From contig NC_068996.1 in NCBI RefSeq assembly GCF_001194135.2, forward strand, positions 40,186,784 to 40,240,166: DNA of 53,383 nt, given 5' to 3'. Shown here piece by piece: positions 39-53,133 of this stretch (positions within the stretch are counted from its first letter, which is position 1; every line of letters begins with the position of its first letter). A program made the position numbers and the translations under genes. Under the pieces are notes generated by a model. It was given only the letters and a program-made list of their open reading frames with translations, had not been told where the DNA came from and did no database searches. The stretch comes from Octopus bimaculoides (taxonomy: Eukaryota).

Positions 39-297
39 GTGTGTGAGTGTCCCACCACTGCTTGATAACTGCTGTAGGTGTGTTTACGTCCATGTAACTT
101 AGCAGATTGACAAAAAGAGACCGCAGGCTTTAAAAAAATAAGTACTGGCGTCAATTTGTTTGATTAAAATTCGTGAAGGCAGTGCCCCCAGCATGGCCGT
201 AGTCTGATGATTGAAACGAGCAAAAGACAAAAGATTAAAGACTATATAACTGTATTATGATTGAAGCAATATGAAATAAGTAGAAATGAAGTGAAAG

Positions 298-508
298 GCA
301 GCGAGCTGGCAGAAACGTTAGCACGCCGGGGAAAATGCTTAGTGGTATTTCGTCTTTACATTCTGAGTTCAAATTCTGCCGAGGTCGACTTTGCCTTTCA
401 TCCTTTCGGAGTCGATTAAATAAGTACCAGTTATGCACTGGAGTCGATGTAATCGACTTAATCCCTTTGTCTGTCCTTGTTTAGCCCCTTGTGGGCAATA
501 AAGAAATA
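298..508 (+). mobile_element. Full-length tRNA-derived SINE with Nin/Deu-like central domain, tail type C
   Basis: A box TGGCAGAAACGTTAG, B box GAGTTCAAATTC, central GAGGTCGACTTTGCCTTTCATCCTTTCGGAGTCGATTAAATAAGTACCAG. 16-bp TSD agaaatgaagtgaaag at 282-297 and 509-524. Confidence 0.8.
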
Positions 509-699
509 AGAAATGAAGTGAAAGCATATTAAGAGCACAGCTGGAATAGTTCTTGTTTAGCTCCAAATCAGTCCTGATTGAGCAAACCTATGATTAAAAG
601 GCAATCCAACCATGGCCCATACCATTCTAGTTTTTTTTTTGCCTTTTTTTGTTCTTGGTATACATAACTCATACCAGTGGCATATAAAAAAAAGCACCC

Positions 700-3969: not shown

Positions 3970-4165
3970 TGTTAGTTAATTATAATCTGTTAATGAGAAA
4001 ATACCATATGAAATTATCCATATGATATTTTATCTCCTTAATTGAGATGTTTAAGTTCATTTACATAACAAAATTATCATGACATTATACATGAGATTTT
4101 TAATTTTTTTTTGCATCAAATAATACACATGTATTTCTTAAAAACCTTATGAACTCATTTTCTAG

Positions 4166-5435: not shown

Positions 5436-5944
5436 TATCAATTAATATAATTCATTACAGGCAACAAATTAGAATTCCAGAATTGTTATGAAAGCCTAAT
5501 GTGCTAACATTCATATGCTTCATTTGAAAATTGAAAGGGATTAAATATGACCCTGTCAAAAACCTCTGCAATTTGTGAATGTATAAAAATTTAGCATATT
5601 TTGGCTTATTGGTTTTTTTCCTCCATTGTTTATTACCGCAGCTATTCGACATTGTCATAATAATTGCTTAATCTCTTCGTTACCATATTTCAGTTGAAAC
5701 ATATACTTTCTTTGTCGCAATTAAATGTGAAAATAATGAAGAATTTAGTAAAATATCTTTGGTTGGATCATGAACTAACATATTTTGATGGAAAGTTTTT
5801 GCTTAGATTACTTTAAAACAAGAGGTTTGTCTGATAAAGTTAGGAGCTGTCTCAGGCAGGGCGGTATCAAAGGAGTTAATGTATATACATTATTGACAGG
5901 CAAGATGTTGCAGTGTTTGTCTGAAAAAAAAAATCTCTTATAGA

Positions 5945-6550
5945 CAGGTGTAGGCATAGCTGTGTAGAAAGAAGCTTGCTTCCCAATTACATGGTTTTGG
6001 GTTCAGTCTCACTGTGTGGCCCCTTGGGCAAGTGTCTTCTACTGTAGCCTCAGGCTGACCAAAGCTTTGTGAATGGATTTGATGGGCAGAAACTGAATGA
6101 AGCCTGTCATATGCATGCATAGCACAAGTGTGGCTGTGTTATAAGAAGCTTGCTTCCCAACCACATGGTCTAGGTTCAGTCCCATTCTGTGGCACCTTGG
6201 ACAAGTGTCTTTGGGCTGACCAAAGCCTTCTGAGTAGATTTGGTAGACAGAAAGTGAAAGAAGAACGTGTATGTATGTGTGTGTGTGTGCATGTGTGTGG
6301 GTGTGTGCGTGCGTGTATGTGTGCGTGCGTGTGTCTTTGCGTTTGTTTGTCCCCCCACAACTGCTTGACAACCAGTGTTAGTGTGGATATGTTCCCATAA
6401 CTTAGCCATTTGGCAAAAGAGATTGATAGAATAAGTAACAAACCTAAAAAAATAAAGCACTTGGGTCAGTTCATTTGATTAAAAACCTTTCAAAGCATTG
6501 CCCCAGCATGGTCGCTGTCTAATGACTGAAACAAGTAAAAGATAAAAGAT
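5945..6550 (+). mobile_element. SINE family A with duplicated 5' half (second head at about 6121)
   Basis: Two consecutive ...gtggctgtgt..aagaagcttgcttccc heads followed by a single 3' half. Confidence 0.75.
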
Positions 6551-7029
6551 GCCATGTTAAAAAGCACAATATATATATTGGTGTTTTTAACATTGCATGT
6601 CTGTACAAGGTTTTTATCTTGGACAGAAAGCGCATCTTGCCTGTCAATGGTGTCTATACTTTAAGTATGGTATATAGATGGTTATTTTGATCTAATACTG
6701 CTGGTGCCACATAAAAAGTATCCAGTTTCATTTCTTACATCCAACAGATCCTCTTCTCACAGACTGGAATAAATTGGGAAAGGGTAGGATCAATGAAGCC
6801 CAATGACTGATGTTGTACATGAAGAGAAATAATTATACTGGTACAGGCAAGTGATTGGCATTGGGTGACGCTGATTAGAACACTGCATTTAAGTTGATGA
6901 TAAGAGATAGAGCTAGTAAGGGGAGAGAAAAAGGAAAGCACAGTGAAGAATATTTAGAGTAGATTAGAGAGATTCAGTTACATGTCTGTGTGTGTGTGTT
7001 TGGGGGTGAAACTGACATATTCAGTTCAC

Positions 7030-7853: not shown

Positions 7854-8554
7854 GTAAGTAGGGTTTATTTTTTTATTTTTTGGTTCTTCTTTTCTTTTTA
7901 TGTATTGGCAAATTAAAATTTGTTATTGCTCAACTTTCGTTTTGGGTAAAAAAAATTTGTTTATTTTTCTTACAGTCTTCTATTATCCTTTTGCATTTTT
8001 GCTTCTCTCTGTGCACTTTATTACCATTTTTACTGGATTACACTTTAGAACTGACTAATTCAGGTAGAAAGGATGGAATGGTCTACATATAACTATGCAT
8101 AAGTCTCAGATTGGTGAAAACCTAATTATTCATAGATGTTAACTTATAAATAAGTATAATAACCATTGAAAACTAGTTTTTCTGATAAACATAATTGGTC
8201 TTGAGTACATCAGTAGGAGTACATCAGTAACAGTGTCATATTGTCTCTTTTTAATATTTCCTATCCATTTAAGACAGCCAGTTGACATTATCGTTAGTGC
8301 ACCAGACAAGATGCTCAGTGGCGTTTTGTTCGTCTACATTCCAAGTTCAAATTTTGCTGAGGTCAACTTTACCTTTCGCCCTTTTGGGGTTAATAAAATA
8401 AGTAACAGTTGGGGTTGATAAAATAAGTAACACTGGGGTCGATGTAATTGACTTATCCCCTTTCCAAAATTGCAGGCCTTGTGCCAAAATTTGAAACCAA
8501 TATTCCATTTTTCTAAGTTCGCATTGTTAAGGTTGTTATAATAATAATAATAAT

Positions 8555-8879
8555 GATGTTGAGAGGAATTCTTTGGGGTTTGAATAATTCATCTTAGGAA
8601 ACATGGGTGTTTCATTCAACATCCTTAAACAACCCTTATTCAGGGACCTTTTGAGTAGAATGAGCTACTCAACCTGAAGAAAATTTTAACTGGACTCCAT
8701 CTGCAAGGTCATGTGCTGTTTATCTTGATATGAAACCACCATGTCGCACACATATGGTTGTGATGCATGTGCCTGGTGTACCCTTATCAGGCGGGTAGTC
8801 ATGATGGGTATACAGGGCTTCATATATTTATACCCCAGTGTCACTTTGATGGCATGCACTGCTCTCTCATTCACTAGTA

Positions 8880-8905
<26 letters not shown>
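8555..8905 (+). mobile_element. Unclassified retroposon 3' end with (AAT)n tail (family D)
   Basis: Homologous to the reverse-strand copy at about 41170-41750 and a partial copy at about 9770-9905. Ends gcactgctctctca..(aat)n. Confidence 0.6.
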
Positions 8906-8909
<4 letters not shown>

Positions 8910-8912
<3 letters not shown>

Positions 8913-9362
8913 CCTTTCTACTAAAGGCACAGGGCCTGAAGTTTGGTGGGAGTGGACTAATCGATTACATTGACCCCAGTGTTTCACTAATACTTAATTT
9001 ATCAACCCCGAAAGGATGAAAAGCAAAGTCGGAATTTGAACTAAGAGCATAGCATCGGGCAAAATACTGCTAAGCATTTCTTCCAGCGTGCTAACAATTC
9101 TGCCAGTTCACAACCTTGATGATGATGATGATGATAATAATAATGATAATAATAATTCTTTCTACTAAAGGCACAAAACCTGAAATTTTAGTGGAGGCGA
9201 CTGGACTAATTGATTACATTGACCCCAGTGTTTCACTGGTACTTATTTCATTGACCCCAAAAGGAGGAGGGGCAAAAGTGACCTCTGCAGCATTTCAACT
9301 CAGACCCTAAATTTGGATGAAATGCTGCCAAGCATGCTAACAATTCTGCTAGCTTGCCACCT
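8910..9362 (-). mobile_element. Two tandem Nin-domain SINEs
   Basis: Reverse complement of the A box, B box and Nin core, each copy ending in an (ATT)n tail. Confidence 0.7.
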
Positions 9363-11435: not shown

Positions 11436-11535
11436 GTATGTTTATTTCATTTTCTTATCTATCTCAGTCAAGGAGACCAGCAAGAGAAATCAGATCAAAT
11501 TTGTGTAAAACCCTTGTGTTAATATTTTCTTCCCC

Positions 11536-11877
11536 TTATTTCTTTATTGCCCACAAGGGACTAAACATAGAAGGGACAAACAAGGACAGACAAAGGGGTT
11601 AAATTGGTTACATCGACCCCCAGTGGGGGGACAAACACAGACACAAAGTTTAACACACATAGATACACACACGCACACATGGAAGGTGGACGTTAAACAA
11701 TGATGATGATGATATATATATTCTTTCAGTTTCTGTCTATCAAATCCACTCACAAGGCTTTGGTTGGCCCAAGGCTATAGTAGAAGACACTTGCCCAAGG
11801 TGCCACGGAGTGGGACTGAATCTAGAGCCATGTGGTTGGGAAGAAAGCTTCTTACCACACAGCCACACCTGCACCTA
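11536..11877 (-). mobile_element. Chimeric SINE: family A 5' half joined to a Nin-SINE type C tail
   Basis: On the - strand the family A head and body run to tttgtcccccca, then continue as ctgggggtcgatgtaacc...gtgggcaataaagaaataag. Confidence 0.65.
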
Positions 11878-12001: not shown

Positions 12002-12603
12002 ATATATATATATAAATAAATGTATGTATGTATGTAAATAATGTGTGTTTGTTTCTATCTGCACTGGCTTAAACAAAAATCATGATGTTGAAGTAGTGTT
12101 GACGTTGCACTTCTGTCAATAAATCATCTACTCACATTGTACTGTTAAAGCTATATGAAACAGAAGATTTGAAAACAGGCAACGGTTAGTGTCAGGAAAG
12201 GCTTCTGGCTATAAAACAACATGTCAATAACATACCTAACTATCTAATCCACATTTTCATGGAGGAACGGACGTAAAAACAAGCAAATGAACAAGCGATC
12301 ACGAGTAATTCTAATTTTGAGATTTCCGAGTTGTCTCCCCTCCTTTATCCTTGCATTAAGGTTCTACTCTCTCTCTCTCTCACTCTAGCGGGTTTCTTGA
12401 CTGACAGAACACTTTTTGCTTTACTACATTAACGCTTTACCTTACTGACCCCGTTTTGCACCATATTTTCTTTTGTGCGTTTTTTTTTTTCATTTTATTA
12501 TTTTTTTATATTTAAAGATTATCTAACCTTACATATCTTTCTAGTTCACTATGTATATTACCATTCTGCAAACATCATGATCCACCAGGACTTTTGACTA
12601 GTA

Positions 12604-17672: not shown

Positions 17673-19417
17673 ATTTGTTGATGTGGAGTAAACCTTCGAC
17701 ATTCCTAACCCAGAAACTTGTCCAAAGACATAGAACGTTGACATGTCACATACTGAACTATCAGTAAGGCTTTGAAATCCTAGAGCCATCTGGGAAATGC
17801 CTTGTTAATATACATATTGGTTTCAAATTTTGGCACAAGGTCAACAGTTGTGGGGGGAAAAAGTGAAAATCAATTACATCAACCCCAGAACTCAACTGTT
17901 ATTTATTTTATCAACTCTGAAAGGATGAAAGACAAAGGTGACCTTGGCAGTATTTGAACTCTGAACATAAAGATAGATGAAGTGTTGCAAAGCATTTTAC
18001 CAGGAGTGCTAATGATTTTGTCAGCCTGCCGCCTTAAACTGTTAATGTGTATTATATTGTATGGTACAATCTTAATCGATCACTACTGCGTGAAATGATT
18101 GTATCCTCTCATTAGCTCTGACAAAGACTAGTAAGAGCAACAATTCAATTAAAATGGATTGACAATAATCCTCATCATCATTTAACATCTGCTTTCCATG
18201 GGTTAGACAGTTAGACTGGGACTAGTAAGCTGGAGAGCTGTACTAAGTTCCAGTCTGTTTTCGGTTGGTTTCTATCACTGGATGTCCTTCCTAATGCCAA
18301 CCACTCCAAGAATGTAAGGCTTGCATTTTATGTGCCACCGGCATGGGTGCTTTTGTGTGTCAGTTACGTGTCACTGGCATCAGCCATAACTATTATTTCA
18401 CTTGGCTTGACAAGGCTTCTCAAGCACTGTTTATTGGCAAAGGCCTTGGCCACTTGTCATCGTCTCCAGTTGATGTTCATGGCATAAAAATATTTTGTTT
18501 CTCACAGGTGGAAGTTACATGAGTTGTAAGATAGACTAAAAGAGATGCTTAGGACATTTGGTTTGAGAGGTTTGGGAAATCAATTTGAGAGAATATCATT
18601 AAGACTCCTAAATGAGATGAAACCTGATATTTTCCTTGTTTCAATGTGAGTTCAAGGCTTGCAATAGTGTGAAACTCCACTGAAGTGTGGACTCTACCAG
18701 CAGGTGTTAAACTGGGTGATAGATTAAACTTATTATTCGAGTGTTGTATAGTGAAACTGTACACTCCTCCCAGTAAAAAGTGGTAGTAGCCAGCCATTAT
18801 AAATAGGCCAGTAGCCAGTCAACAGGAAGAAGGTGAGAAGGTCAAGAGTATGTGTAGACTGTGTTGATAGTCGTGTCTGTGCTGATATAGTAATTCTACT
18901 GTGATACTGAGTGGGTGTTATAACAATCCAAGCTTTTGAGGATAATAACACTGTATGACTGGGGGTCATACAGTGCCAGATAACTTTGAAAGATAACAAC
19001 CATCATCAAAAAACAGATACAACAGTGGCAAAAGACCACTTTACAAAATCAAGATAAAAAAAATAAAAAAATTAGTCTTCCTAATGGATTCCACATAGTT
19101 TCCGTCTGCCAAATTTCACTGAGAAAAGATTGGGCCAGTCTGAAGGTTGAGTAGAGGAGAATCTTGTTTAAAATGCTGTACTGAAAGCATGTAGTTGTGA
19201 AGTTGATCTCTCAACCATGTAGCCATGCCAGATTTAAGATTTATGTGAAATGCTATATTGTTGATCAATCCAAACCATAGCAACATGATAAAAAGGGCCA
19301 TTATAGTGTTGGCGGCGGTGGCGGCAGCAGTAGTGATGATGATTATGATGTTGATGATTTTATGCCTCTATACAAGGTGTTTAGGTGTCCAATAATTACC
19401 TTTATAATTTGAAATAT

Positions 19418-24409: not shown

Positions 24410-24780
24410 CAGGTATGACTGAGTAATTAAGAAGCTTGCTTCCCAATTTTGTAGTCTTGGGTTCAATCCCACTGCATGGCATCTTGGACTGGTGTCTTCT
24501 TACTATAGCACCAGGCTGACCAAAGATTTGGGAGCGGGTTTGGTAGATGAAAATTGGGGAAGCTCATTGTGTGTGTGTGTGTGTGTTTGTCCCCCTACCA
24601 TCACTTGACAACTGATGTTGGTGTGTTTATGTCCCTGTAACATAGCGGTTTGGCAAAAGAGGCCAATAGAATAAGTACTACGCTTACAATGAATAAGTCC
24701 TGGGGTCGATTTGTTAGACTAAAGGTGGTGCTCCAGTATGGCTGCAGTCAAATGACTTAAACAAATAAAAGAAAAGAAAG
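24410..24780 (+). mobile_element. SINE family A (diverged)
   Basis: Head, CORE-like segment and 3' half colinear with 3551-3969. Confidence 0.75.
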
Positions 24781-24944
24781 TAAAATTTATATATATATAT
24801 ATAAATTTTAATTCAAAACTTATGAAAACAAAACGTTTGTACTACAGAGCCAGAGGTAGTTTTAGCTCGGTTGGTATCAAAAGGGTTAAATGATGACGAG
24901 AAGGTGAAGTTTAATTTCTGTCTGTACCTAAAACTATGAAGATA

Positions 24945-25610: not shown

Positions 25611-26170
25611 TTCAAATACCTTGGTGCGTGGACACAAAGTACTGAAAAACATGTTGTAGCAAGGAAAGCTCTTTCCTAGAGTGTATGCCATAAATTGATA
25701 AAGGTATGGAGTTCAAAGTTAGCCAGGAAATTGGAAGTGAGGTTGTTTCTGGCAACAGTGGAGTCTGTTCTTCTATATGAGGCTGAAACATGGATGCTCA
25801 CTAAAGCATTGAAGAAGCAGTTGGATGGTTGTTATACAAGGACGCTTGGAATGGCACTGAATGTCTCCTGGACGAGTCATGCAACAAATGCTGACTTATA
25901 CCAGGGACTACCAAAAGTAACATTGAAGATACAGCATAGAAGGATGAGGCTAGCTGGACACTGCATCAGACACACAGATGAAATTGCTAACAAGCTCTGG
26001 CAATCAACAGAAGGAAGACGGCCTATATCGACAACTTGCTGGAGGATACTGGTATGGAAGGGGTACAGGAGCTGAGGACCATTATGGAAGATCGAGATGA
26101 ATGGGGTAAACGTGTAGAAACAGTCTTGGGGTGTCCTGAGGGATGATCTAGATAGAGATAGATAGAGATG
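25611..26170 (+). mobile_element. 5'-truncated RTE/RTE-X LINE (post-RT C-terminal region)
   Basis: FKYLGAW...LFLATVESVLLYEAETWMLTKALKKQLDGCYTRTLGMALNVSW...RRMRLAGHCIRH...EDRDEW. Contains a stop and a frameshift, and ends in a GATA-type tail. Confidence 0.85.
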
Positions 26171-28540: not shown

Positions 28541-28765
28541 TAAGGCGGCAAGCTGGTGGAAACATTAGCACGCCGGGTGAAATGCTTAGCGGTATTTCGT
28601 CTGTCTTTATGTTCTGAGTTCAAATTCTGCTGAGGTCGACTTTGCATTTCATCCTTTCGGAGTCGATAAATTAAGTACCAGTTGCATACTGGGGGTCAAT
28701 CTGATCAACTTCCCCACCCACCCCAAAAATTTCAGGCCTTGTGCATAGAATAGAAAAGAACATTA
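28541..28765 (+). mobile_element. Nin-domain SINE, full length
   Basis: A and B boxes plus Nin core. Flanked by acattaataatgtac direct repeats at about 28526-28540 and 28760-28774. Confidence 0.8.
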
Positions 28766-30282: not shown

Positions 30283-30795
30283 TCTGTTGTGTCTGGGGAG
30301 AGTCATTCTCTTTTAGTGCCTTATTATTTAACATACTCACTGGTAAAATTCCCACTCATTTACTTATTTATTTTTCTAAAATTTTAGAAAAATAAAAAAA
30401 TAAATAAATAGGCGTAGGAGTGGCTGTGTGGTAAGTAGCTTGCTTACCAACCACATGGTTCCGGGTTCAGTCCCACTGCGTGGCACCTTGGCCAAGTGTC
30501 TTCTAGTCGGGCCGACCAAAGCCTTGTGAGTGGATTTGGTAGATGGAAACTGACAGAAGCCCATCAAATNNNNNNNNNNNNNNNNNNNNNNNNNNNNNNN
30601 NNNNNNNNNNNNNNNNNNNNNNNNNNNNNNNNNNNNNNNNNNNGACTAATGGCAGTGCTTCAGCATGGCCACAGTCAAATGACTGAAACAAGTAAAAGAG
30701 AAAAGTAAATAAATTAATGAGTGGAAATTTTACCAGTGAGTGTGTTAAATTATAAGGCACTAAAAGAGAATGACTCTACCCTGACAACAAAATAT
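30283..30795. repeat. Inverted repeat (about 95-bp arms) enclosing a family A SINE (30410-30700, +) and a gap
   Basis: 30295-30375 is the near reverse complement of 30703-30782. Confidence 0.8.
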
Positions 30796-40376: not shown

Positions 40377-40804
40377 NNNNNNNNNNNNNNNNNNNNNNNN
40401 NNNNNNNNNNNNNNNNNNNNNNNNNNNNNNNNNNNNNNNNNNNNNNNNNNNNNNNNNNNNNNNNNNNNNNNNNNNNNNNNNNNNNNNNNNNNNNNNNNNN
40501 NNNNNNNNNNNNNNNNNNNNNNNNNNNNNNNNNNNNNNNNNNNNNNNNNNNNNNNNNNNNNNNNNNNNNNNNNNNNNNNNNNNNNNNNNNGCATTTGTAC
40601 AACTGCTGTCCTGCGACTAAAATCGGTAAAACGAATAAGAGAATGAATGTAAGATGTAAGAATTATTATTCTTTCTTTCTTTCTGTCCGTCTTTCTTTCT
40701 TTCTTTTTTTCTTTTTTTTCTTTGTAAGGGCGGTAAGTGGTATAAACAATAATTAGAGTCCTCCAGTATAGTATGACTGCTACTAATTATTTCATTATTC
40801 TTTA

Positions 40805-42544
40805 AGGCAGTGAGCTGGGAAAACTGTTAGCATGCTTGACACCATTTCGTCTGCCGTTACATTCTGAGTTCAAATTCTGCTGAAGTCGACTTTGCCTTTC
40901 ATCCTTTCAAGGATGTTGCTAACTGGGGGCGATGTAGTCTACTTAGTCCTTTCCCCCAGATCTGCTGGTCTTCCACCAAAATTTCAAACCAAGGCAGTGA
41001 GCTGGCAGAATCATTAGCACACTGGACGAAATGCTTAGTGGTATTTTGCCAGTCTCTATGTTCTGAGTTCAAATTTCACCATAGTCCACTTTGCCTTTCA
41101 TCCTTTTGGGGTCAATAAATTAAGTACCAGTGAAACTTATACCTTGTATCTTTAGTAGAAAGGATTATTATTATTATTGAGTGAGAGAGCAGTGCATGCC
41201 ATCAAAGTGACCTTGGGGTACAAATATACGAAGCCCAGTATACCCACCATGACTACCAGTCTGATAAGGGTACACCAGGTACATGCATCACAATAGGTGC
41301 GTGACATGATCTCATATCAAGATAAACAGCGCATGACTTCACAGGTGGAGCTCAGTTAGAATTTTCTTCGGGTCGAGTAGCCCATCCCACTCAAAAGGTC
41401 CCTGAATAAGGTTTGTTTAAGGATGTTCAGCAAAACACCCATATTTCCAAAGGTGAATTATTCAAACACCAAAGAATTTCTCTCAACACATGGCTATGAT
41501 GCTCCCCCACTACTTCTGCTCATGATCAGAGATGCACATATCGTCAGCCACCAAGGGACATGCTCAACTGGTTAAGGTCAAACAACTGACAAACAAATCT
41601 GTGGTATTAAGCATAATATTTGCTGTAGCCCATCTTTTATACCAAGACAAAACAATGTACATGATAACACTTCCAGTTAGTTAAGATCAGAAGCCATGAG
41701 AGCCATTGCCTGATACTGCATCCGGGTATTGCCATGAGAGCCACTGCCTGGAGACATCGCACAGTATACAATATCGTGAGGTTGTTGATTGAAGATATTG
41801 TGTCTACCGGGGGGTTTATTCTGTTTGTCAAGTCACAACAAGGACGTCAGACAGACAGTACTGGAACTGCAATATGCATGCAGTTCCAAGTAATGCCAAT
41901 TTTTGCAATACACCTAGATTGTAGGGTATTCCTAAAGTCTTCAGATGTTTTTTCAGATTGGGTGGTTATCATTATTATTACTATTATTATTATTGAACTG
42001 GCAAAAGTGTTAGCATGCTGTGAGCAAAATGCTTAGCGGCTGCATTCAGAGTTCTAATTCTGAGGTCAATTTTGTCTTTCATCCTTTCAGATGGTACTTT
42101 ATGCAATATGCATGCAGTTCCAAAGGGTGATGAGTTAGTAAATTCATTAGCATGTTGGGCAAAATGCTTAGCAGCATTTTGTCAGTCTTTATATTCTGTG
42201 TTCAAATTCTTCCAAGGTTGACTTAGCCTTTCATCCTTTTATGGTCGATAAAATGAGTACCAGTTCAGCATTGTGGTTGATGTAATCGACTTGGCCACAG
42301 CTCCAAAACTGTGCACATTGTGCCAAAATTTGAAACCATTATTACCATCATTATTGTTAGCTGACAGAATCATTAGAACGCCGGGCAAAATACTTAGTGG
42401 CTTAAGTTCAAATTCCAGCAAAGGTTGACTTAGCCTTTCATCCTTTTGGGGTTGATAAATTAAGTACCAGTTATGCATTAGGGTCGATATAATCAACTAT
42501 CCCACTCCTTCAAAATCCCAAGCCTTGTGCCTATAGTAGAAAGG

Positions 42545-42578
<34 letters not shown>

Positions 42579-42803
42579 GGGTGAGCTTTCAGATCGTTAG
42601 CATGCTGAGTAAGATGTTTAATGGCATTTCATCTATCTTTACGTTCTGAGTTTAAGTTCCACCGTCAATTTTACCTTTCGTCCTTTCAGGGTCGATAAAT
42701 TAAGTTCCAATGAAACACTGGGGTCGTTGTACTCAACTGTCCCCCTCCCACCAAATCTCAGGCTTTGTGCCTTTAGTAGAAAGGATTATAATTATTATTA
42801 TTG

Positions 42804-42849
<46 letters not shown>

Positions 42850-43225
42850 GGTGGAGACAAAAAGCTTAGTGGCATTTCATGTCTTTAGATTTTGAGCTCA
42901 AATTCTGCCGAGGTCGATTTTTCCTTTCCATCCTTTCAGGGTTGATAAAATAAGTACCAGTGATGTACTGGTGTCGATGTTATCGACTAGTCCCCCACCC
43001 CACTCCANNNNNNNNNNTGGCATTTCATGTCTTTAGATTTTGAGCTCAAATTCTGCCGAGGTCGATTTTTCCTTTCCATCCTTTCAGGGTTGATAAAATA
43101 AGTACCAGTGATGTACTGGTGTCGATGTTATCGACTAGTCCCCCACCCCACTCCACCACACCTCACCCCACCCACTACACCCCACCTCACCCCCTCAAAA
43201 ACTGCTGGCCTTGTGCCAAAATTTG
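40805..43225 (+). mobile_element. Head-to-tail cluster of at least 7 Nin-domain SINE copies separated by (ATT)n, with a family D element (about 41170-41750, -)
   Basis: Heads at about 40805, 40991, 41990, 42125, 42355, 42578 and 42848. 42870-43007 is duplicated at 43018-43155 across a 10-N gap. Confidence 0.75.
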
Positions 43226-43411
43226 AAACCTTTTATTTCATCACTCTTCTTATGAGATCGGACACAGAAATGTGCCACGTCACCCAAATGGTTGCAGTCA
43301 GTTGGTTTAACGCAGCACTTCGTTATAAATTTAATAAAACAAGTGTATGCATCTCATCATTTTTACTCTCTTGCAATGAGCTGTATTATGATCTTGGAGG
43401 GGGTTAGTAGT

Positions 43412-43469
<58 letters not shown>

Positions 43470-44253
43470 AGCTGTCGGTAAACTCATGCCAAAGTATATG
43501 AGTTCATTCCTTGTTTGTTTGAGCCATTTTTACCTCCTGATGCTAATATATTCTTGTGGGTGGGTAGGTGGGTGGTGAGGAAAGGAAAGATGCGAGAACG
43601 ACACAACTTCCACATTTTTTTTTCCCCCCTTTTGCTATAAATATAAATATGTGTCCTTTTATCTGTGTTAAGACGACAACAACAAAACATGCACGCTCAC
43701 ACACACAGACACACACACACACACACACACACAGCCGAAAATAAAAATCGATAATATCTAAGCATTCAGGTGCGTTCGGGTGCTGTAGATTGTCGACAAC
43801 ATTGCTGTAATGTTTTAATTTTCCGTACGAAGAAATTTATTATTTGAATATGATTTTAGGTGGAATTCTTTGGTTAGAAAATGAAAGAAAACAAAAAGGA
43901 CTGACAACACAGGCTTTTTTTCTTCTTCTTTCATAATCCCTCTTAATTGCAAAAGTCAATACAGCTTATTAAAGCAGGCATTTGAAATTTAAGTGACAGA
44001 AATTTACACAATGTGTGAAATAAATAAGTCTAGAGAATATGAGAGAAACCTTTTTGACATTATTATTATTATTATTATTATTTGGATGGCATGCTGGCAG
44101 ACTCATTATAGCAGCAGTGAAAATGTCCAGTGGTATTTTATATGACTCGTTATGAATTCAAATTTTATTGGGGTCAACTTTGCTTTTCATCCTGCCGGGG
44201 TGGGGCTGATAATATAAAATAAGGTGATCTAAATGGCTATTATTTTCTTCTGT

Positions 44254-44288
<35 letters not shown>

Positions 44289-44353
44289 GCTAGCCCTGTG
44301 CCAAAATTTGAGACCACCACCATATCATCATCATCATCATCATCATTATTATT

Positions 44354-44926
44354 GGGTCTATTTCAAACACCTGCTGTTGCGTATGGGACGGATCCGACTA
44401 TCAGCTGAATCCATTGTGAAGATTGCCCCGCCATCCTCTTTTGGCCAGGAGGGGCAGGCAATTTTTATTTGTCTAGTGGTTGTAGCAAAAGAGGTAGTAT
44501 GGTGGACCCATTTGAAAGGGCTAAAGACAGCCACTTTCCTCTTTGGCCAAGCCCTCATCAACTTTTTCGAGTTTCATTTGAAAGGAAGTTGAGGGTGGAG
44601 AGGGAAGTGTTGCCTTGTAGCAAGTTTGTTGAATGGTGGGTGAATGTTGGAAGAATGGCCAGTGAAAAAGGACCAATTCTGAGCGTGCACCTGTAAACAA
44701 AAAAAGGGCTCTTGCCCTGTTGTTCAGGCACCCATGACTTTTGTGGGTTTTTCCACAAGGTCCTTAAAGCACCTCCCCTATTGGGAGTTTTAAATTATTT
44801 AATTTTAAATTGTTTATATTGTTTACACATTGTAAAACCCATTGTACCGTCCTGTTTTATCTTTTATGTTATTGTATGTCATTTAATGTAATTTTATGTG
44901 AGCCCTCGTGGCCAATAAAAGAATGA
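44354..44926 (+). mobile_element. 5'-truncated L1-clade (Tx1-like) LINE: ORF2 C-terminus, 3' UTR, AATAAA and (ATT)n tail
   Basis: FICLVVVAKEVVWWTHLKGLKTATFLFGQALINFFEFHL / RKLRVEREVLPCSKFVEWWVNVGRMASEKGPILSVHL* (one frameshift; stop at 44694-44696). This fits the Tx1-type AK..IW..R...E......F...W terminus. AATAAA at 44914. Confidence 0.65.
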
Positions 44927-44967
<41 letters not shown>

Positions 44968-44983
44968 TATTATTATTATTATT

Positions 44984-45200
44984 AAAGTGACGAGCTGGCC
45001 GAATCATTAGCATGCCAGGCGAAATGTTTAGCAGTATTTTATTTGTCGCTACGTTCTGAGTTCAAATTCCACCGAGGTCAGCTTTGCCTTTCATCCTTTC
45101 GGGGGTCAATAAATTAAGTACCAGTTGTGTACTGGGGTCGATCTAATCGACTGCCCCCCCTCCCACCAAATTTCAGGCCTTGTGCCTATAGTAGAAAGGA
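44984..45200 (+). mobile_element. Nin-domain SINE, well preserved, long (ATT)n tail
   Basis: Intact A and B boxes, Nin core, and ...gtgcctatagtagaaagg(att)n. Confidence 0.85.
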
Positions 45201-45218
45201 TTATTATTATCATCATCA

Positions 45219-45267
<49 letters not shown>

Positions 45268-46219
45268 CATTATTATTATTATTATTATTACATTTTCCCA
45301 TTCCTATCGCTTCTTCCTTCCATTGGATGGGTGTCCATGACATTTTGACCAGCAGACAAGCAGGGCTTGCTGTCCTAGGCTTCGTATTAGTCACCGTCTT
45401 AGAATTCTTTCGTTTTGGAACATTTCTTCTGTCCAAATTTTCTTCTTTTTTTTTTCCTTCTTCTCCTCCCTCTTCTTCTTCTTCTTCCCGTTTCTTTTTC
45501 TTTAATTTTTCTTTTCTCGCTGCTTTACTACATCACGTTTTCTACGCCCCCTCCCACTCACACACTGGACCGTTATTTCGTGTAGTGTATGCACATAATG
45601 AGTATGTCTCTGTGTTTGTGTGCATTCATGCTTATTTCTTTTTGCCTCTTATTTATCAGTGTCGCTGGAGTTTTCTCCCCTCCTCCCTCCATTTGCTACC
45701 CATTACTCTTCCTCTTCTCGTGCCTCCTCCTCCTCCTTCGCTTACCTATAGAATGACTCATTGATTTGGTTATTAAATGCTTCATTCTACCTTTCTTTTC
45801 TTTCTTTCTTTTTTTTTTTTTTTTTTTTTTNNNNNNNNNNNNNNNNNNNNNNNNNNNNNNNNNNNNNNNNNNNNNNNNNNNNNNNNNNNNNNNNNNNNNN
45901 NNNNNNNNNNNNNNNNNNNNNNNNNNNNNNNNNNNNNNNNNNNNNNNNNNNNNNNNNNNNNNNNNNNNNNNNNNNNNNNNNNNNNNNNNNNNNNNNNNNN
46001 NNNNNNNNNNNNNNNNNNNNNNNNNNNNNNNNNNNNNNNNNNNNNNNNNNNNNNNNNNNNNNNNNNNNNNNNNNNNNNNNNNNNNNNNNNNNNNNNTCTT
46101 TTCTTAGTCAGCTTGCTACAATTCTTGGTAGATTGTTAAATTGCTTGTCTATATACCTATTGACATTATTCATCTGTCTTTTTCTAAAACATTCATAAAT
46201 TCAGCAAACATAAATCCAT

Positions 46220-46263
<44 letters not shown>

Positions 46264-46963
46264 GTATGTGTATGTATATAACTTGTGTATATGTATGTTA
46301 GCATATGCATAGGTGTGTAAACTATGAATGTATGTTTGTGTATAAATAGACATTCGGAATCGTTAATTATCTCCATTTGCATATTTTTGCATAATATACA
46401 TGCATCTGTGCATAATATACATGCATCTGTGCATGCAGAAATATGTGTATATATGTATACAGTGTATAATTTGTGTGTGTATGTGTGTGTGTGTGTGTGT
46501 GTAAAATGTCTACATATTTTTCAGACATTTTACAAACCACAACAAAATGGATATTCTTGTAACGAGAATAAATTAATTGACCGATTAAGAGAGAAGAATG
46601 TTAAGAAATCGCATAAGTGAAATGTAAGATAGGTGAAAGTAATAAGTAATTAATTGGTATTTCTTTCTTTCTTTTACTTGTTTCAGTCATTGGACTGCAG
46701 CCATGCTGGAGCATTGCTTTAAAGGGTTTTAATCAAAGAAATCGACCCCACAATATTTAATTTTTTTAAAGCCTGGTAATTGTTGTATTGGCCTCTTTTG
46801 CCAAACTACTAAATTATGTGGGTGTAAACAGACCAACACTGGTTGTCAAGCAGTGGTGTCGAATACAGACATATGTACTCACACAACACACACGCACACA
46901 CACACACACAAGAACCACACATGCACACATACCACACACACACAACGAGCTTCTTTCAGTTTC

Positions 46964-47197
46964 TTATTTCTTTATTGCCCACAAGGGGCTAAACATTGAG
47001 GGGACAAACAAGGACAGACAAAGGGTTTAAGTCGATTACATCGACTCCAGTGCGTACCTGGTACTTAATTTATCGACCCCGAAAGGATGAAAGGCAAAGT
47101 CGATCTCGGCAGAATTTGAACTCAGAACGTAAAGGCAGACAAAATACTGCTAAGCATTTTGCCCGGCATGCTAACATTTCTGCCAGCTCGCTGCTTT
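46964..47197 (-). mobile_element. Nin-domain SINE (tail C) inserted into a family A SINE
   Basis: 16-bp TSD agcttct(t/g)tcagtttc at 46948-46963 and 47198-47213. Confidence 0.85.
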
Positions 47198-47479
47198 AGC
47201 TTCTGTCAGTTTCTGCTTACCAAATCCATTCACAGGGCTTTGGCTGGTCCAGTTGTCCCACTGTATGCACAGGGTGCTATACAGTTGAACTGAACCCAGA
47301 ACCATGTGGTTGGGAAGCAACTACAAGAAGGAAAAACAAAGGCCATGTAATTATAAGACCTAGGGAGAGAAAACAAAGTCTAAACATTAGGAACAGTAAA
47401 ATCCTAATTTAATAAAGCTTGGAGGATAGAAAAGGAGTTGGAATTCTTGCAACTATGACAAAACCATTTTGTATACATT

Positions 47480-49535: not shown

Positions 49536-50861
49536 TAAAGTCATTGGTGCTGTTGCAACATAGAAAGCAAAGCAGTACACTCTGTAAAGTGGTTGGCATT
49601 GGGAAGGACATCCAGTCATTGGAACCGTGCCAAAGACATTGGAGCACAGTGCAGTCCTTAAACCTGTCGGTTCCTGTCAAACCATCCAACCCATATCAAC
49701 ATGGAAAATGGGTGTTAATACCTTTTAACATTCAAACTGGCCATATCCAGCCAAAATAAATATTCTACTTGTTTTATGTTTGAAGTAGCCAGACCTGGCA
49801 TCTCACACCTATCTTACAATGTCATTCTGAAATAAACAATCAATCATCAAAATCTTGAAGCTATGAGATGATGCATGATTAATTCAAAACAGTGTGAATA
49901 AATAGGTTTTACATTTGATAGAATAATCTGATTGCTAAAGGATGAAAGAACAATGATGATGATGATGATGATGACTGCTTAGGCAGTAGTGATATTGTTA
50001 TGTGTTCCCCTTAATCCTTTTGATACTGACCTTGCCTGAGACAGCCTCTGGTTCTATGATACAGGTTTCTTGTTTTACAGTGATCCAAATTAAGATTGTT
50101 CTTCAAAACATCACGTTAATTTAGGTTCTACAACCCACCTTAATAATGAGAAAGTTATTTCACTAAATATATCATTATTTTTTAAAAATCAACTGGAAAA
50201 GACGGCAGAATTATAATAACAAAAATGGTCTAGCAGTTCCTTGTTCAAGTTGGTGAAGGTGTGGAATAAAATACCTTACTTGAAAACAAATATGAATTAG
50301 CATCAGTAATGGCACCGGCCATATCATACTTTCTTATTGTCCAACCCGCGCAAGAATGAAAAAAGCAGACATAACAACATTGGTTATATTGGTGGTAGTG
50401 GTTGCAGTTTGAATGCTATGATATTTTTTTCTTCACACCAGAATGTAGATTTAGTGAATTTGGGGTAGATCCTCCAGTTCCTTTGTATGATGGTACTAAC
50501 TATAATTTCTTCATGTGTATGCCTTCTCTGAGTGATTAAACTTCAATGATTTAGTTTTCTTTAGATAGTCTAGGTTTTCATGCTTTATTAGGCACAATAT
50601 TTTAGATCTACTTAGAGATTCTCATATCAATATTTCAGTAAGTAAAGTTACACTGGAAAGATTTGATAGGACCAAAACATGTCTAGAGTTGTCTCCCATA
50701 TATGCTGAAATTATTTAAAATAATATAAGTGAAAGTCTTTTCGTCACCATACAAATATATCTAATTAAAATTCATTGTTGTTTACATTTGTTGTTAAAGG
50801 ACATGCATATGTGGACCACACACAGGTTAGACTGGAATGTAAAATTGTTTCAAATCTTTAA

Positions 50862-51249
50862 GGAGTGGCTGTGTGGTAAGTAGCTTGCTCACCAACCACA
50901 TGGTTCCAGGTTCAGTCCCACTGCTTGGCACCTTGGGCAAGTGTCTTCTACTATAGCTTCGGGCCGACCAAAGCCTTGTGAGTGGATTTGGTAGACGGAA
51001 ACTGAAAGAAGCCCGTCGTATATATGTTTGTGTATATGTTTGTGTGTCTATGTTTGTCCTCCCAGCATCGCTTGACAACCGATGGTGGTGTGTATATGTC
51101 CCTGTAACTTAGCTGTTTGGCAAAAGAGACCGATAGAATAAGTACAAGGCTTCCAAAGAATAAGTCCTGGGGTCGATTTGCTTGACTAAAGGCAGTGCTC
51201 CAGCATGGCCGCAGTCAAATGATTGAAACAAGTAAAAGAGTAAAGAGTA
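50862..51249 (+). mobile_element. SINE family A, near full length
   Basis: Colinear with 3551-3969. Confidence 0.85.
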
Positions 51250-52063
51250 ACCATGGATGTGAACTTCGTCTGTAGGAAGCCTGCATTTGGCTCAATATCA
51301 ATATCAACCCAACCACTGGAATATGCTTCTATGGAACAAACTTTCTTTATAAAGTTTAAATGCGCAAGTGTCTGATATCNNNNNNNNNNNNNNNNNNNNN
51401 NNNNNNNNNNNNNNNNNNNNNNNNNNNNNNNNNNNNNNNNNNNNNNNNNNNNNNNNNNNNNNNNNNNNNNNNNNNNNNNNNNNNNNNNNNNNNNNNNNNN
51501 NNNNNNNNNNNNNNNNNNNNNNNNNNNNNNNNNNNNNNNNNNNNNNNNNNNNNNNNNNNNNNNNNNNNNNNNNNNNNNNNNNNNNNNNNNNNNNNNNNNN
51601 NNNNNNNNNNNNNNNNNNNNNNNNNNNNNNNNNNNNNNNNNNNNNNNNNNNNNNNNNNNNNNNNNNNNNNNNNNNNNNNNNNNNNNNNNNNNNNNNNNNN
51701 NNNNNNNNNNNNNNNNNNNNNNNNNNNNNNNNNNNNNNNNNNNNNNNNNNNNNNNNNNNNNNNNNNNNNNNNNNNNNNNNNNNNNNNNNNNNNNNNNNNN
51801 NNNNNNNNNNNNNNNNNNNNNNNNNNNNNNNNNNNNNNNNNNNNNNNNNNNNNNNNNNNNNNNNNNNNNNNNNNNNNNNNNNNNNNNNNNNNNNNNNNNN
51901 NNNNNNNNNNNNNNNNNNNNNNNNNNNNNNNNNNNNNNNNNNNNNNNNNNNNNNNNNNNNNNNNNNNNNNNNNNNNNNNNNNNNNNNNNNNNNNNNNNNN
52001 NNNNNNNNNNNNNNNNNNNNNNNNNNNNNNNNNNNNNNNNNNNNNNNNNNNNNNNNNNNNNNN

Positions 52064-52563
52064 ATATATATATATATACATATATATGACAGGCTTCTTT
52101 CAGTTTCCGTCTACCAAATCCACTCACAAAGCTTTGGTTGGCCCGAGGCTACAGTAGAAGACACTTGGCTGTGTGGTAAGTAGCTTGCTTACAAACCACA
52201 TGGTTCCGGGTTCAGTCCCACTGCGTGGCACCTTGGGCAAGTGTCTTCTGCTGTAGCCTCGGAGGTGACCAAGGCCTTGTGAGTGGATTTGGTAGATGGA
52301 AACTGAAAGAAGCCCGTCGTATATATGTATATATATATATATGTATAAGTATGTGTGTGTATATGTTTGTCCCCCCAACATTGCTTAACAACCGATGCTA
52401 GTGTGTTTACGTCCCCATAACTTAACGGTTTGGCTAAAGAGACCGATAGAATAAGTACTAGGCTGACAAAGAATAAGTCCTGGGGTCGATTTGCTCGACT
52501 AAAGGCAGTGCACCAGCATGGCCACAGTCAAATGACTGAAACAAGTAAAAGAGTAAAAAAGAG
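52064..52563. mobile_element. Inverted pair of family A SINE segments (partial - copy 52064-52166 followed by a + copy 52167-52563)
   Basis: ...gtagaagacactt | ggctgtgtggtaag...aagtgtcttctgctgtagcc forms an inverted repeat. Confidence 0.75.
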
Positions 52564-53133
52564 TAATATAAAAATAATATATATGGGTGCAAGAATGTCT
52601 GTGTGGTAAGAAGTTTTCTTCCTAATCACATGATCTTGGGTTCAGTCTCATTGTGTGGCACCTTGAGAAAATGCCTTCTACTATTGTCCTGGGTCAACCA
52701 AAGTCTTCTAAGTGGATTTGGTTGAAGGAAACTGAAAGAAGCCTGTTGGGTATGTGTGTGTATTTGTCATCCTTTGACAATAGGTGTCGGTTTGTTTATG
52801 TCCCCTTAACATAGCAGTTTGGCAATAAATGCTGATACAATAAGTACCAAGCTTAGGAAAAAAAATATTTACTCAGGTTGATTTGTTTGACTAAAACCCT
52901 TGTAAAATGGTGCCCCAGCATGGCCGCAGCCGAATATCTGCATAAAGCAAAAAAAAAAAAATTCCAGAAGATATTCACAATAGAATAGAAAAACGAGAGA
53001 GTATTAAAAATGGATTACCAAATATAATTCTAACGAAATATATATAAAAAGAACAAATTATATATCATTGGAATGTTAAAGGGTCATCTGAATCACTCTG
53101 TACATGTGTACATATATATACACATACATTTGT

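What the first reader, a model, noticed from the sequence alone, without database searches (positions are those of the whole stretch)
44354..44935. Apparent SINE/LINE partner pair: Nin-domain SINE tails match the 3' UTR of a Tx1-like LINE
Seen: the LINE ends cccattgtaccgtcctgtttt...tatgtgagccctcgtggccaataaaagaatgaa(tta)n. Tail-C SINEs (463-510 +, 11536-11603 -, 46964-47025 -) end ccctttgtctgtccttgtttgtcccctc.atgtttagccccttgtgggcaataaagaaataag. The (ATT)-tailed SINEs end ggccttgtgcctatagtagaaaggattatt, about 23 of 31 positions matching the LINE end in my hand alignment. Established: SINEs that use 'stringent' LINE machinery carry the partner's 3' end, and Tx1 is an L1-clade group that is often target-specific. 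Inference: this abundant SINE is mobilised by this Tx1-like LINE, and tail subtypes may track different Tx1 subfamilies. I do not know of this pairing being described in cephalopods but cannot search for it.
Basis: partly seen in the sequence, partly recalled or inferred. Interest (0 to 1): 0.75.

Follow-up and report, generated by a model that had tools for sequence, protein, structure and literature searches.

The report
Octopus SINE shares LINE 3' tail
A short, non-coding jumping element that is very common in octopus genomes carries at its end a copy of the last ~65 bases of an L1-type autonomous element found in the same window, the classic sign that the long element copies the short one; it is a well-supported new example of a known relationship, not a new kind of biology.

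Summary
Window 44353-44984 is a 5'-truncated LINE: the last ~113 ORF2 codons (one frameshift), a 231-nt 3' UTR and a (TTA)n tail.

**Tail C, well supported.** Relatives of this LINE from Octopus sinensis, Argonauta hians and unnamed samples share its 3' end. That end matches the tail-C SINE module over about 65-70 nt (64-77% identity; 0 of 1000 shuffles reach the score). The A. hians SINEs carry the A. hians version of the tail.

**Tails A and B, weaker.** The commoner tails match only in the last ~25 nt (A: 3-23 of 5000 shuffles; B: 18-195 of 5000). All tails and LINE ends share a 4-bp hairpin with a CUUGU loop. Its stem covaries: 89% of cells pair, against 27-49% in slid controls.

**Classification.** A near full-length A. 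hians relative has an APE endonuclease, a reverse transcriptase and a zf-RVT domain, and is closest to human L1 ORF2p. L1-superfamily membership is supported. The Tx1 subgroup could not be tested.

**Other points.** SINE copies have 15-16 bp target-site duplications, and elements pile up head-to-tail at (ATT)n tails. I found no paper describing this pairing. Verdict: a new member of a known kind, of moderate interest.

The parts
44353..44696 (+). 5'-truncated LINE: last ~113 codons of ORF2 downstream of the zinc knuckle. Frame +1 runs 44353-44583, there is one frameshift, then frame +3 runs to the stop at 44694-44696.
   Evidence: tblastn with P0018 gives E=6e-38, 69% and 59% identity. P0018 and its longer relatives carry Pfam zf-RVT, with or without RVT_1.
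44697..44927 (+). LINE 3' UTR. Its last ~70 nt form the module shared with the SINE tails.
   Evidence: Reads and alignments. Shuffle tests.
44902..44912 (+). LINE 3' hairpin, GCC-CTCGT-GGC. This decayed copy keeps 3 bp; relatives have 4 bp with a CTTGT loop.
44928..44984 (+). (TTA)n microsatellite tail of the LINE. The next SINE starts directly after it.
   Evidence: Relatives L002, L004, L007 and L009 also end in (ATT)n or (ATC)n.
295..510 (+). Full-length SINE with tail C. The tail module is ~460-510 and the hairpin GCCC-CTTGT-GGGC lies at 486-498. This copy lacks 14 nt of the module. It is flanked by a ~14-bp target-site duplication, AAATGAAGTGAAAG.
46963..47197 (-). Full-length SINE with a complete tail C (~46963-47030), flanked by a 16-bp target-site duplication (15 of 16 identical).
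11535..11625 (-). 5'-truncated SINE copy with tail C.
44985..45290 (+). SINE with tail A (...CAGGCCTTGTGCCTATAGTAGAAAGGA followed by (TTA)n), inserted directly after the LINE's (TTA)n tail.
   Evidence: Hairpin AGGC-CTTGT-GCCT.
44093..44352 (+). SINE with tail B (...CCCTGTGCCAAAATTTGAGACC) ending in (ATC)n(ATT)n. The LINE's truncated 5' end abuts this microsatellite.
42359..42848 (+). Two adjacent tail-A SINEs (42359-42578 and 42583-42848), each ending in (ATT)n. They are part of the head-to-tail array at 40805-45290.
8276..8498 (+). SINE with tail B (...GGCCTTGTGCCAAAATTTGAAACCA). Other tail-B copies lie at 17819-18025 (-), 42132-42340 (+), 43018-43230 (+) and 40805-40991 (+).
28542..28759 (+). 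Tail-A SINE in unique sequence with a perfect 15-bp target-site duplication, ACATTAATAATGTAC.

Best explanation
Window 44353-44984 is a dead, 5'-truncated copy of an L1-superfamily LINE, probably the L1-Tx1 type reported in octopus genomes. The abundant SINE with a Deu/Nin-like central domain is a non-autonomous passenger of this LINE family.

Its tail-C subfamily carries a ~65-nt copy of the LINE's 3' UTR end. I infer that the LINE's ORF2 protein recognises SINE transcripts through this module. The module consists of a small hairpin (4-bp stem, CUUGU loop), then an A-rich stretch AAUAAA(A)GAAAU, then in most cases an (AUU)n repeat. The protein would then copy the SINE into the genome by target-primed reverse transcription.

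What is shown:
- the shared tail;
- its conservation in two octopod lineages;
- covariation in the hairpin stem;
- the 15-16 bp target-site duplications;
- the LINE's domain make-up.

What is inferred:
- that the hairpin is the recognition element;
- that mobilisation happens in trans;
- that tails A and B are served by sister LINE subfamilies not sampled here.
For: 1. LINE identity. The window fragment matches the ORF2 C-terminus of P0018 at E=6e-38. A near full-length relative in Argonauta hians (L004) has an ORF1 with a CCHC knuckle and an ORF2 with Exo_endo_phos (5e-11), RVT_1 (2e-18) and zf-RVT (6e-8). The best solved-structure match is human L1 ORF2p, at 5e-22 over the RT and 8e-13 over the endonuclease-to-RT N-terminal half, against 1e-13 for R2.

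2. Shared tail. The 68-nt tail-C module aligns end-to-end with four LINE 3' ends: 53 of 69 columns (A. hians), 54 of 75 (L002), 50 of 70 (O. sinensis) and 49 of 76 (window copy). Local scores give z of 4-13, and 0-3 of 1000 dinucleotide shuffles reach them.

3. Species matching. A. hians SINEs end ...GGCCCTTGTGGCTAATAGAGAAATC. They share GGCTAAT with the A. hians and O. sinensis LINE ends, where the other LINE copies read GGCCAAT and the window SINE reads GGGCAAT. A second, unrelated short tRNA-type SINE in A. hians carries the same tail.

4. Hairpin. Across 27 tails, 88.9% of cells pair, against 67.5% ± 3.3 in shuffles (0 of 500) and 27-49% when the partner columns are slid. Three of the four pairs change on both sides. 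The stems are AGGC/GCCU, UGGC/GCCA, GCCC/GGGC, GGCC/GGCC and GACC/GGUC. The hairpin is in the minimum-energy fold of all six tails folded.

5. Retroposition signatures. Target-site duplications of 15-16 bp flank the SINE copies.

6. Shared insertion context. Eight of 16 5'-intact SINE copies, and the LINE itself, sit directly after (ATY)n or another element's tail. The same pattern occurs in A. hians.
Against: - Only one LINE copy of this family is in the window, and it is the most diverged from the SINE tail (64%).
- Tails A and B make up about 18 of roughly 22 classifiable copies in the window. They match the LINE only over ~25 nt. Free local alignment is not significant for B and is marginal for A.
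- No LINE ending in tail A or B was found.
- The hairpin has only 4 bp, and folding energies are not better than shuffles (z -0.6 to -2.2).
- I derived the structure from these same sequences, which favours it in the controls.
- Part of the shared stretch (AATAAA) could be kept by function rather than by descent.
- Concurrent activity of the SINE and the LINE was not measured.
- Tx1 placement is untested.
Confidence: 0.75

Rival explanations
1. The resemblance is chance or convergence. Both ends are AT-rich and both contain a polyadenylation-like AATAAA, so they are not homologous.
For: Within the window alone, blastn gives only E=0.03-1.7 for the tail-C copies among about 120 weak hits. Tail B does not exceed shuffles in local alignment.
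Against: - Tail C aligns over 65-70 nt, well beyond the AATAAA, with four independent LINE copies. None of 1000 shuffles reaches the score for L002, L003 or L004, and 0-2 of 1000 for the window copy.
- The match is end-anchored in every case.
- A. hians SINEs and LINEs share lineage-specific variants.
Confidence: 0.03
2. Only the minor tail-C subfamily uses this LINE. The abundant tail-A and tail-B subfamilies are mobilised by a different LINE, either a distant L1/Tx1 lineage or another clade. The short hairpin-like motif they share is then inherited from a common SINE ancestor and is not a recognition signal.
For: - Tails A and B share no similarity with the LINE upstream of the hairpin.
- No matching LINE turned up in about 120 kb of octopod sequence or in two metagenome scans.
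- Other LINE clades are present in the window (RTE-like fragment at 25695-26170) and are active in octopus (PMC13282606).
Against: - End-anchored alignment of the last ~25 nt is above chance for A (3-23 of 5000) and weakly for B (18-195 of 5000).
- The stem changes on both sides between tails A, B, C and the LINEs while the loop stays CUUGU. That fits selection on the hairpin rather than simple inheritance.
- Tail A and the LINE both end in (ATT)n and share the same insertion context.
Confidence: 0.2
3. The direction is the reverse: the LINE family picked up its 3' end from a SINE, by template switching or by insertion of a SINE into its 3' UTR. The shared tail then records a capture event, not dependence.
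For: Elements of this group insert right at each other's tails, so chimaeras are plausible. Sequence alone cannot give the direction.
Against: - The module is contiguous with the 3' UTR in LINE copies from at least three sources, including divergent subfamilies at 65-70% protein identity.
- Two unrelated SINE heads in A. hians carry the module. A LINE-derived module reused by several SINEs explains that most simply.
- Even if the direction were reversed, a shared functional tail still implies shared machinery.
Confidence: 0.05

Closest known systems
UnaSINE1 / UnaL2 of the eel (stringent-type SINE/LINE pair; Kajikawa and Okada 2002, cited in PMC4758252 and PMC4494074; details from my own knowledge)
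   Same: The SINE carries the LINE's 3' end. That end holds a conserved stem-loop followed by a short terminal repeat. The inferred recognition of the 3' end by the LINE reverse transcriptase is the same.
   Different: UnaL2 belongs to the L2 clade, while this LINE is L1-superfamily. The hairpin here is much shorter (4 bp, CUUGU loop), and its role is inferred from covariation only, not from assays.
Vhc_1 SINEs and CR1-1_CGi / CR1-14_CGi in the Pacific oyster (PMC4758252)
   Same: A mollusc SINE with a deeply conserved central domain, assigned a partner by homology of the SINE tail to LINE 3' UTRs.
   Different: The partner there is CR1 clade. Here the host is a cephalopod, the central domain is Deu/Nin-like and the partner is L1-type.
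SINEU / Tx1-Mar in crocodilians (PMC4494074)
   Same: A SINE assigned to a Tx1-group LINE, with shared insertion-site preference used as evidence of partnership.
   Different: SINEU has a poly(A) tail and no LINE-derived 3' module, so that link rests on target preference and shared 5' parts. Here the link is a shared 3' module, and the Tx1 placement of the LINE is unproven.
Kibi and Koshi, microsatellite-specific Tx1 elements of teleosts (Kojima and Fujiwara 2004, as summarised in PMC4494074)
   Same: L1/Tx1-type LINEs found inside microsatellites. The window LINE lies between (ATC/ATT)n and (TTA)n.
   Different: Strict target specificity is not shown here. Half of the SINE copies sit in unique sequence with ordinary target-site duplications. 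The preference may simply be for A/T-rich tails, as with Alu insertions into older A-tails.
Alu / L1 in primates (relaxed type; my own knowledge)
   Same: An L1-superfamily LINE mobilising an abundant SINE, with long target-site duplications and insertions into tails of older copies.
   Different: Alu shares only a poly(A) tail with L1. Here about 65 nt of specific 3' UTR sequence is shared, which points to sequence- or structure-specific recognition.

Membership tests
SINE/LINE partner pair with a common 3' tail | The SINE 3' end is homologous to the 3' end of the LINE. | tested here: met
   Tail C against four LINE ends gives 64-77% identity over 69-76 columns, with 0-2 of 1000 shuffles reaching the score. 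Tails A and B match only in the last ~25 nt.
SINE/LINE partner pair with a common 3' tail | Both elements occur in the same genome and lineage. | tested here: met
   Both are in the window and in the A. hians loci L004 and L012, with lineage-matched tail variants.
SINE/LINE partner pair with a common 3' tail | The periods of activity overlap. | not tested
   This needs genome-wide copy-to-consensus divergences. Only one LINE copy and about 25 SINE copies were available.
SINE/LINE partner pair with a common 3' tail | SINE copies are flanked by target-site duplications, as expected of target-primed reverse transcription. | tested here: met
   Duplications of 16 bp (15 of 16 identical), 15 bp (perfect) and ~14 bp flank copies 47197-46963, 28542-28759 and 295-510.
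SINE/LINE partner pair with a common 3' tail | The SINE head derives from a Pol III-transcribed small RNA (tRNA). | tested here: inconclusive
   ARAGORN finds no tRNA in the window, and Rfam gives no tRNA match in 40700-47300. Box-B-like GAGTTCAAATTC is visible by eye. Octopus SINEs are classed tRNA-Deu and tRNA-Core in PMC8967140.
SINE/LINE partner pair with a common 3' tail | The LINE mobilises the SINE in trans, and this depends on the tail. | not testable with these tools
   Needs a retrotransposition assay.
L1 superfamily of LINEs | N-terminal APE-type endonuclease, then reverse transcriptase, then a C-terminal Cys/His domain in ORF2. | tested here: met
   The relative L004 has Exo_endo_phos 5e-11, RVT_1 2e-18 and zf-RVT 6e-8. 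The window copy keeps only the part downstream of the knuckle.
L1 superfamily of LINEs | The RT is closer to L1 than to other clades. | tested here: inconclusive
   Among solved structures, human L1 ORF2p is best (5e-22, against 1e-13 for R2) and aligns over both the endonuclease-to-RT half and the RT-thumb half. However, the PDB holds few LINE clades: no RTE, CR1 or Tx1.
Tx1 group within L1 | Placement with Tx1 references in an RT phylogeny. | not testable with these tools
   No Repbase, Dfam or RTclass1 references were on hand. None of the 120 homologues listed carries a name that classifies it. L1-Tx1 is the only L1-type class listed for octopus in PMC13282606 and PMC8967140, which is consistent but is not a test.
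Tx1 group within L1 | Target-sequence preference. | tested here: inconclusive
   The LINE and 8 of 16 intact SINE copies follow (ATY)n or another tail, where about 2% is expected (binomial 3e-10). The other 8 copies are in unique sequence, and one LINE copy is too few.
Nin / Deu-domain SINE superfamily | The central domain is homologous to the Nin/Deu consensus. | not testable with these tools
   No SINEBase, Repbase or Dfam sequences were available. PMC5804259 and PMC8967140 support the presence of such SINEs in molluscs and octopus but print no consensus that I could align.
Stem-loop-dependent (stringent) 3' end recognition | A conserved hairpin in the shared tail. | tested here: met
   A 4-bp stem with a CUUGU loop: 88.9% of cells paired, 3 of 4 pairs with changes on both sides, 0 of 500 shuffles reaching the covariation score, and slid controls at 27-49%. 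The hairpin is present in all six minimum-energy folds.
Stem-loop-dependent (stringent) 3' end recognition | The hairpin is required for retrotransposition. | not testable with these tools
   Needs mutational assays.

The most novel reading that the evidence does not exclude
An L1/Tx1-type LINE family, from a group usually regarded as relaxed and poly(A)-dependent, uses sequence- or structure-specific recognition of a tiny CUUGU hairpin plus an (AUU)n tail. It prefers to insert at the tails of earlier copies. Through a set of sister subfamilies it has driven the expansion of the tail-A, tail-B and tail-C SINEs, which form a large part of octopod genomes. The partnership would be at least as old as the split between Argonauta and Octopus.
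Probability: 0.4. Interest if true: 0.6.

Novelty: new member of a known kind. Interest (0 to 1): 0.5.

Why it matters
SINEs make up about 11.6% of the Octopus vulgaris genome (PMC13282606) and about 40% of the octopus repeat content (PMC8967140). Their expansion is specific to octopuses. Yet they are filed as 'tRNA-Deu' or 'unclassified', with no autonomous partner named.

Naming the partner, and a compact candidate recognition element, would help in three ways:
- it would explain what powered that expansion;
- it would let annotators classify hundreds of unclassified SINE families by their tail;
- it would give a simple experimental system (hairpin and tail swaps) for 3'-end recognition by an L1-type reverse transcriptase.

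The principle is textbook, so the gain is in annotation and mechanism, not concept.

Tried and rejected
- **Wrong frame at first.** I read 44409-44693 as the ORF2 frame because it is open for 95 codons. Pfam gave nothing and the word-indexed protein search gave nothing. The exhaustive search did hit, partly on out-of-frame ORFs called on decayed LINE copies. P0018 revealed the true frames.
- **Naming the clade from database names.** None of the 120 listed homologues of the A. hians RT carries a clade name.
- **ORF1.** No Pfam family and no solved-structure match.
- **P0035 / L008.** This is a GC-rich, unrelated organism and was discarded.
- **Looking for a LINE ending in tail A or B.** None was found in L001-L012. 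Exact-pattern scans of the metagenome collection for tail A and for the LINE end both returned zero. The second scan should have found L002, so that collection does not hold those contigs.
- **tRNA origin of the SINE head.** ARAGORN and Rfam found nothing. The weak miRNA hits at 46195-46492 are simple repeats, far below the gathering scores.
- **Absence of T4 runs in the SINE as a Pol III signature.** Some copies do have TTTT, so I dropped this argument.
- **Folding energy as evidence for the hairpin.** It is not better than shuffles, so the case rests on covariation.

Full report
**What the window is**

The window is AT-rich (about 37% G+C), has N gaps, and is packed with short interspersed repeats. 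The closest protein relatives of its LINE fragment come from Octopus sinensis and Argonauta hians.

**Checking the observation**

- The quoted LINE end is at 44838-44927, followed by (TTA)n at 44928-44984.
- A blastn map with one full SINE copy finds 26 pieces of this SINE in the window.
- Their 3' ends fall into three types:
  - A, the commonest: ...CAGGCCTTGTGCCTATAGTAGAAAGGA followed by (TTA)n;
  - B: ...GGCCTTGTGCCAAAATTTGAAACCA;
  - C: ...GTCCCCTCAATGTTTAGCCCCTTGTGGGCAATAAAGAAATAAG.

**Is 44353-44984 a LINE?**

My first reading frame was wrong. Pfam and the indexed protein search found nothing. The exhaustive representative search returned P0018, a 360-residue ORF2 C-terminus with a zf-RVT domain.

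tblastn then showed the true reading:
- frame +1 at 44353-44583, 69% identity;
- one frameshift;
- frame +3 to the stop at 44694-44696, 59% identity;
- joint E=6e-38.

The fragment is thus the last ~113 codons of ORF2, a 231-nt 3' UTR and a (TTA)n tail. It is truncated at its 5' end exactly where the (ATC)n(ATT)n tail of the upstream SINE stops.

**What kind of LINE?**

Relatives of P0018 include proteins with RVT_1 plus zf-RVT, and proteins from A. hians and O. sinensis. The A. hians locus L004 holds a near full-length element:
- ORF1 of 639 residues with a CCHC knuckle;
- ORF2 in two pieces, carrying Exo_endo_phos (5e-11), RVT_1 (2e-18) and zf-RVT (6e-8).

Among solved structures, human L1 ORF2p is the best match for both halves (5e-22 and 8e-13), ahead of R2 proteins at 1e-13. 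This supports the L1 superfamily.

I could not test the Tx1 subgroup. No reference set was on hand, and no homologue carried a clade name. The literature lists L1-Tx1 as the only L1-type class in octopus, with 13 recently active families in O. vulgaris (PMC13282606; also PMC8967140). That is consistent but is not a test.

**The shared tail**

LINE 3' ends from L002, L003 (O. sinensis), L004 (A. hians), L007 and L009 all end ...GSCCYTTGTGGCYAATAAA(A)GAAAT, mostly followed by (ATT)n or (ATC)n.

The 68-nt tail-C module aligns end-to-end with them:

| LINE copy | Identical columns |
|---|---|
| A. hians (L004) | 53 of 69 |
| L002 | 54 of 75 |
| O. sinensis (L003) | 50 of 70 |
| Window copy | 49 of 76 |

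Homology begins at TAAACCC, right after the SINE's central domain. Local alignment scores exceed dinucleotide shuffles:
- z 8.4-13 for tail C against L002, L003 and L004, with 0 of 1000 shuffles reaching the score (z 4.7-4.9 and 2-3 of 1000 for L007);
- z 4.3-7.7 for the window LINE copy, with 0-2 of 1000.

Within the window alone the signal is faint (blastn E=0.03-1.7).

**Independent replication in Argonauta**

A. hians SINEs with the same central domain end ...TGTTCGGCCCTTGTGGCTAATAGAGAAATCTAT. They match the A. hians LINE end in 47 of 64 columns. They share GGCTAAT with the A. hians and O. sinensis LINE ends, where the other LINE copies read GGCCAAT and the window SINE reads GGGCAAT.

A second, shorter SINE with an unrelated tRNA-like head sits in three tandem copies at L004 4903-5365 and carries the same tail. 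One tail module on two different heads, tracking the LINE of the same lineage, is what a mobilisation module should look like.

**Tails A and B**

- Free local alignment to LINE ends is marginal for A (z 0.7-4.4) and not significant for B (z -0.3 to 2.7).
- With both ends anchored, the last ~25 nt match above chance: 3-23 of 5000 shuffles for A and 18-195 of 5000 for B.
- No LINE ending in tail A or B was found in any fetched locus, and two exact-pattern metagenome scans returned nothing.

The idea that tail types track LINE subfamilies therefore stays open.

**A covarying hairpin**

All tails and LINE ends can form a 4-bp stem around the loop CTTGT, about 15-20 nt before the terminal repeat. 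The stems differ:

| Element | Stem |
|---|---|
| Tail A | AGGC/GCCT |
| Tail B | TGGC/GCCA |
| Tail C | GCCC/GGGC |
| LINE L002 | GGCC/GGCC |
| A. hians LINE fragment | GACC/GGTC |

On an ungapped alignment of 27 tails:
- 88.9% of cells pair, against 67.5% ± 3.3 in shuffles (0 of 500);
- slid controls give 27-49%;
- three of the four pairs change on both sides.

Of the 24 CTTGT sites with a full 4-bp stem in about 100 kb, 20 are SINE or LINE tails. The hairpin appears in the minimum-energy fold of all six tails tested, though folding energies are not better than shuffles. A divergent A. hians LINE subfamily (L012) keeps the stem AGCC/GGCT but has a 4-nt loop, AGGT.

Two caveats apply. The stem is short, and I derived the structure from these same sequences.

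**Retroposition signatures and insertion context**

SINE copies in unique sequence have target-site duplications of 14-16 bp.

Eight of the 16 5'-intact SINE copies are directly preceded by (ATY)n or by another SINE's tail. Such tracts cover only 1-2% of the window (binomial about 3e-10).

The stretch 40805-45290 is a head-to-tail array on one strand that includes the LINE. A. hians shows the same pattern: SINE, LINE 3' fragment, three SINEs, then the full-length LINE. This could be a real target preference, as in microsatellite-specific Tx1 elements (PMC4494074). It could also be a general liking for A/T-rich tails.

**Most likely mechanism**

The SINE is transcribed from its own head. Its LINE-derived 3' module (hairpin, A-rich stretch and, in most subtypes, an (AUU)n repeat) is bound by the LINE's ORF2 protein. 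The endonuclease nicks A/T-rich DNA, often an older tail. The RNA's 3' repeat pairs with the nicked strand, and reverse transcription follows.

- Shown: the shared module, the covariation, the duplications and the domain make-up.
- Inferred: binding, action in trans, and the role of the hairpin.

**Comparison with what is known**

The mechanism resembles the stringent SINE/LINE pairs (UnaSINE1/UnaL2; oyster Vhc_1/CR1, PMC4758252), but the partner here is L1-type. SINEU/Tx1-Mar (PMC4494074) is the nearest Tx1 case, and it lacks a shared 3' module.

Searches of the held literature found no description of this octopus pairing. Octopus SINEs are reported as tRNA-Deu, tRNA-Core or unclassified (PMC8967140, PMC13282606). 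Repbase, Dfam and SINEBase could not be consulted.

**Verdict**

This is a sound, well-replicated instance of a known relationship: a new member of a known kind. It has useful detail (the hairpin, the (ATT)n context, conservation across octopods) and two open points (Tx1 placement, and the partners of tails A and B).

Noticed in passing
window 40805-45290; L004 4540-5365: SINEs and the LINE lie head-to-tail on one strand, each starting at the (ATT)n or tail of the previous element. Eight of 16 5'-intact SINE copies are directly preceded by such a tract, against about 2% expected. The same arrangement occurs in Argonauta hians.
   Followed up: partly
window 41179-41965 and about 8557-8950 (inverted): An unidentified ~790-bp repeat begins directly after the (ATT)n tail of a tail-A SINE in both places. 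At 41179-41965 it is also followed by (ATT)n. It has no CTTGT hairpin at its end. It may be another element that uses or targets (ATT)n.
   Followed up: no
window 3527-3985, 5923-6574, 24429-24804, 30387-30731, 50832-51271, 52132-52584: A second, even more abundant SINE family with a different head and an unrelated tail (...CCAGCATGGCCGCAGTCAAATGACTGAAACAAGTAAAAGA, then GTAAA-like repeats). Its partner LINE is not the one studied here.
   Followed up: no
window 25695-26170 (+): Fragment of a different LINE. The RT C-terminal motifs are of the RTE/CR1 kind (...LYEAETW..., ...RLAGHCIRH...), and it ends in (GATAGA)n-like repeats. Its 3' end resembles none of the SINE tails.
   Followed up: partly
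window 42859-43008 and 43018-43142: The same SINE stretch is repeated exactly on both sides of a 10-N gap. This is most likely an assembly artefact, not two insertions.
   Followed up: no
L004 4903-5365: Three tandem copies of a short (~150 nt) SINE with a tRNA-like head (...GCTCAATTGGTAGAGCG...GGTTCAATCCC...). It carries the same LINE-type tail as the Deu/Nin-like SINE of A. hians.
   Followed up: partly
L012 about 12270-12300: A divergent A. hians LINE subfamily (65% ORF2 identity) ends ...TCAGCCAGGTGGCTAAGAAAGAAAT. The 4-bp stem is kept (AGCC/GGCT), but the loop is AGGT instead of CTTGT.
   Followed up: no
L011 about 1330-1462: The 3' UTR of a related LINE holds a tandem array of a ~19-nt unit (TATATTGTCCCTTGTTT). 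The unit resembles the GTCCTTGTTTGTCC stretch of the SINE tail-C module.
   Followed up: no
proteins P0003, P0012, P0016 and others: Several database 'proteins' are out-of-frame ORFs called on decayed LINE copies. A wrong-frame query therefore still finds significant hits, which is a trap when classifying such fragments.
   Followed up: yes
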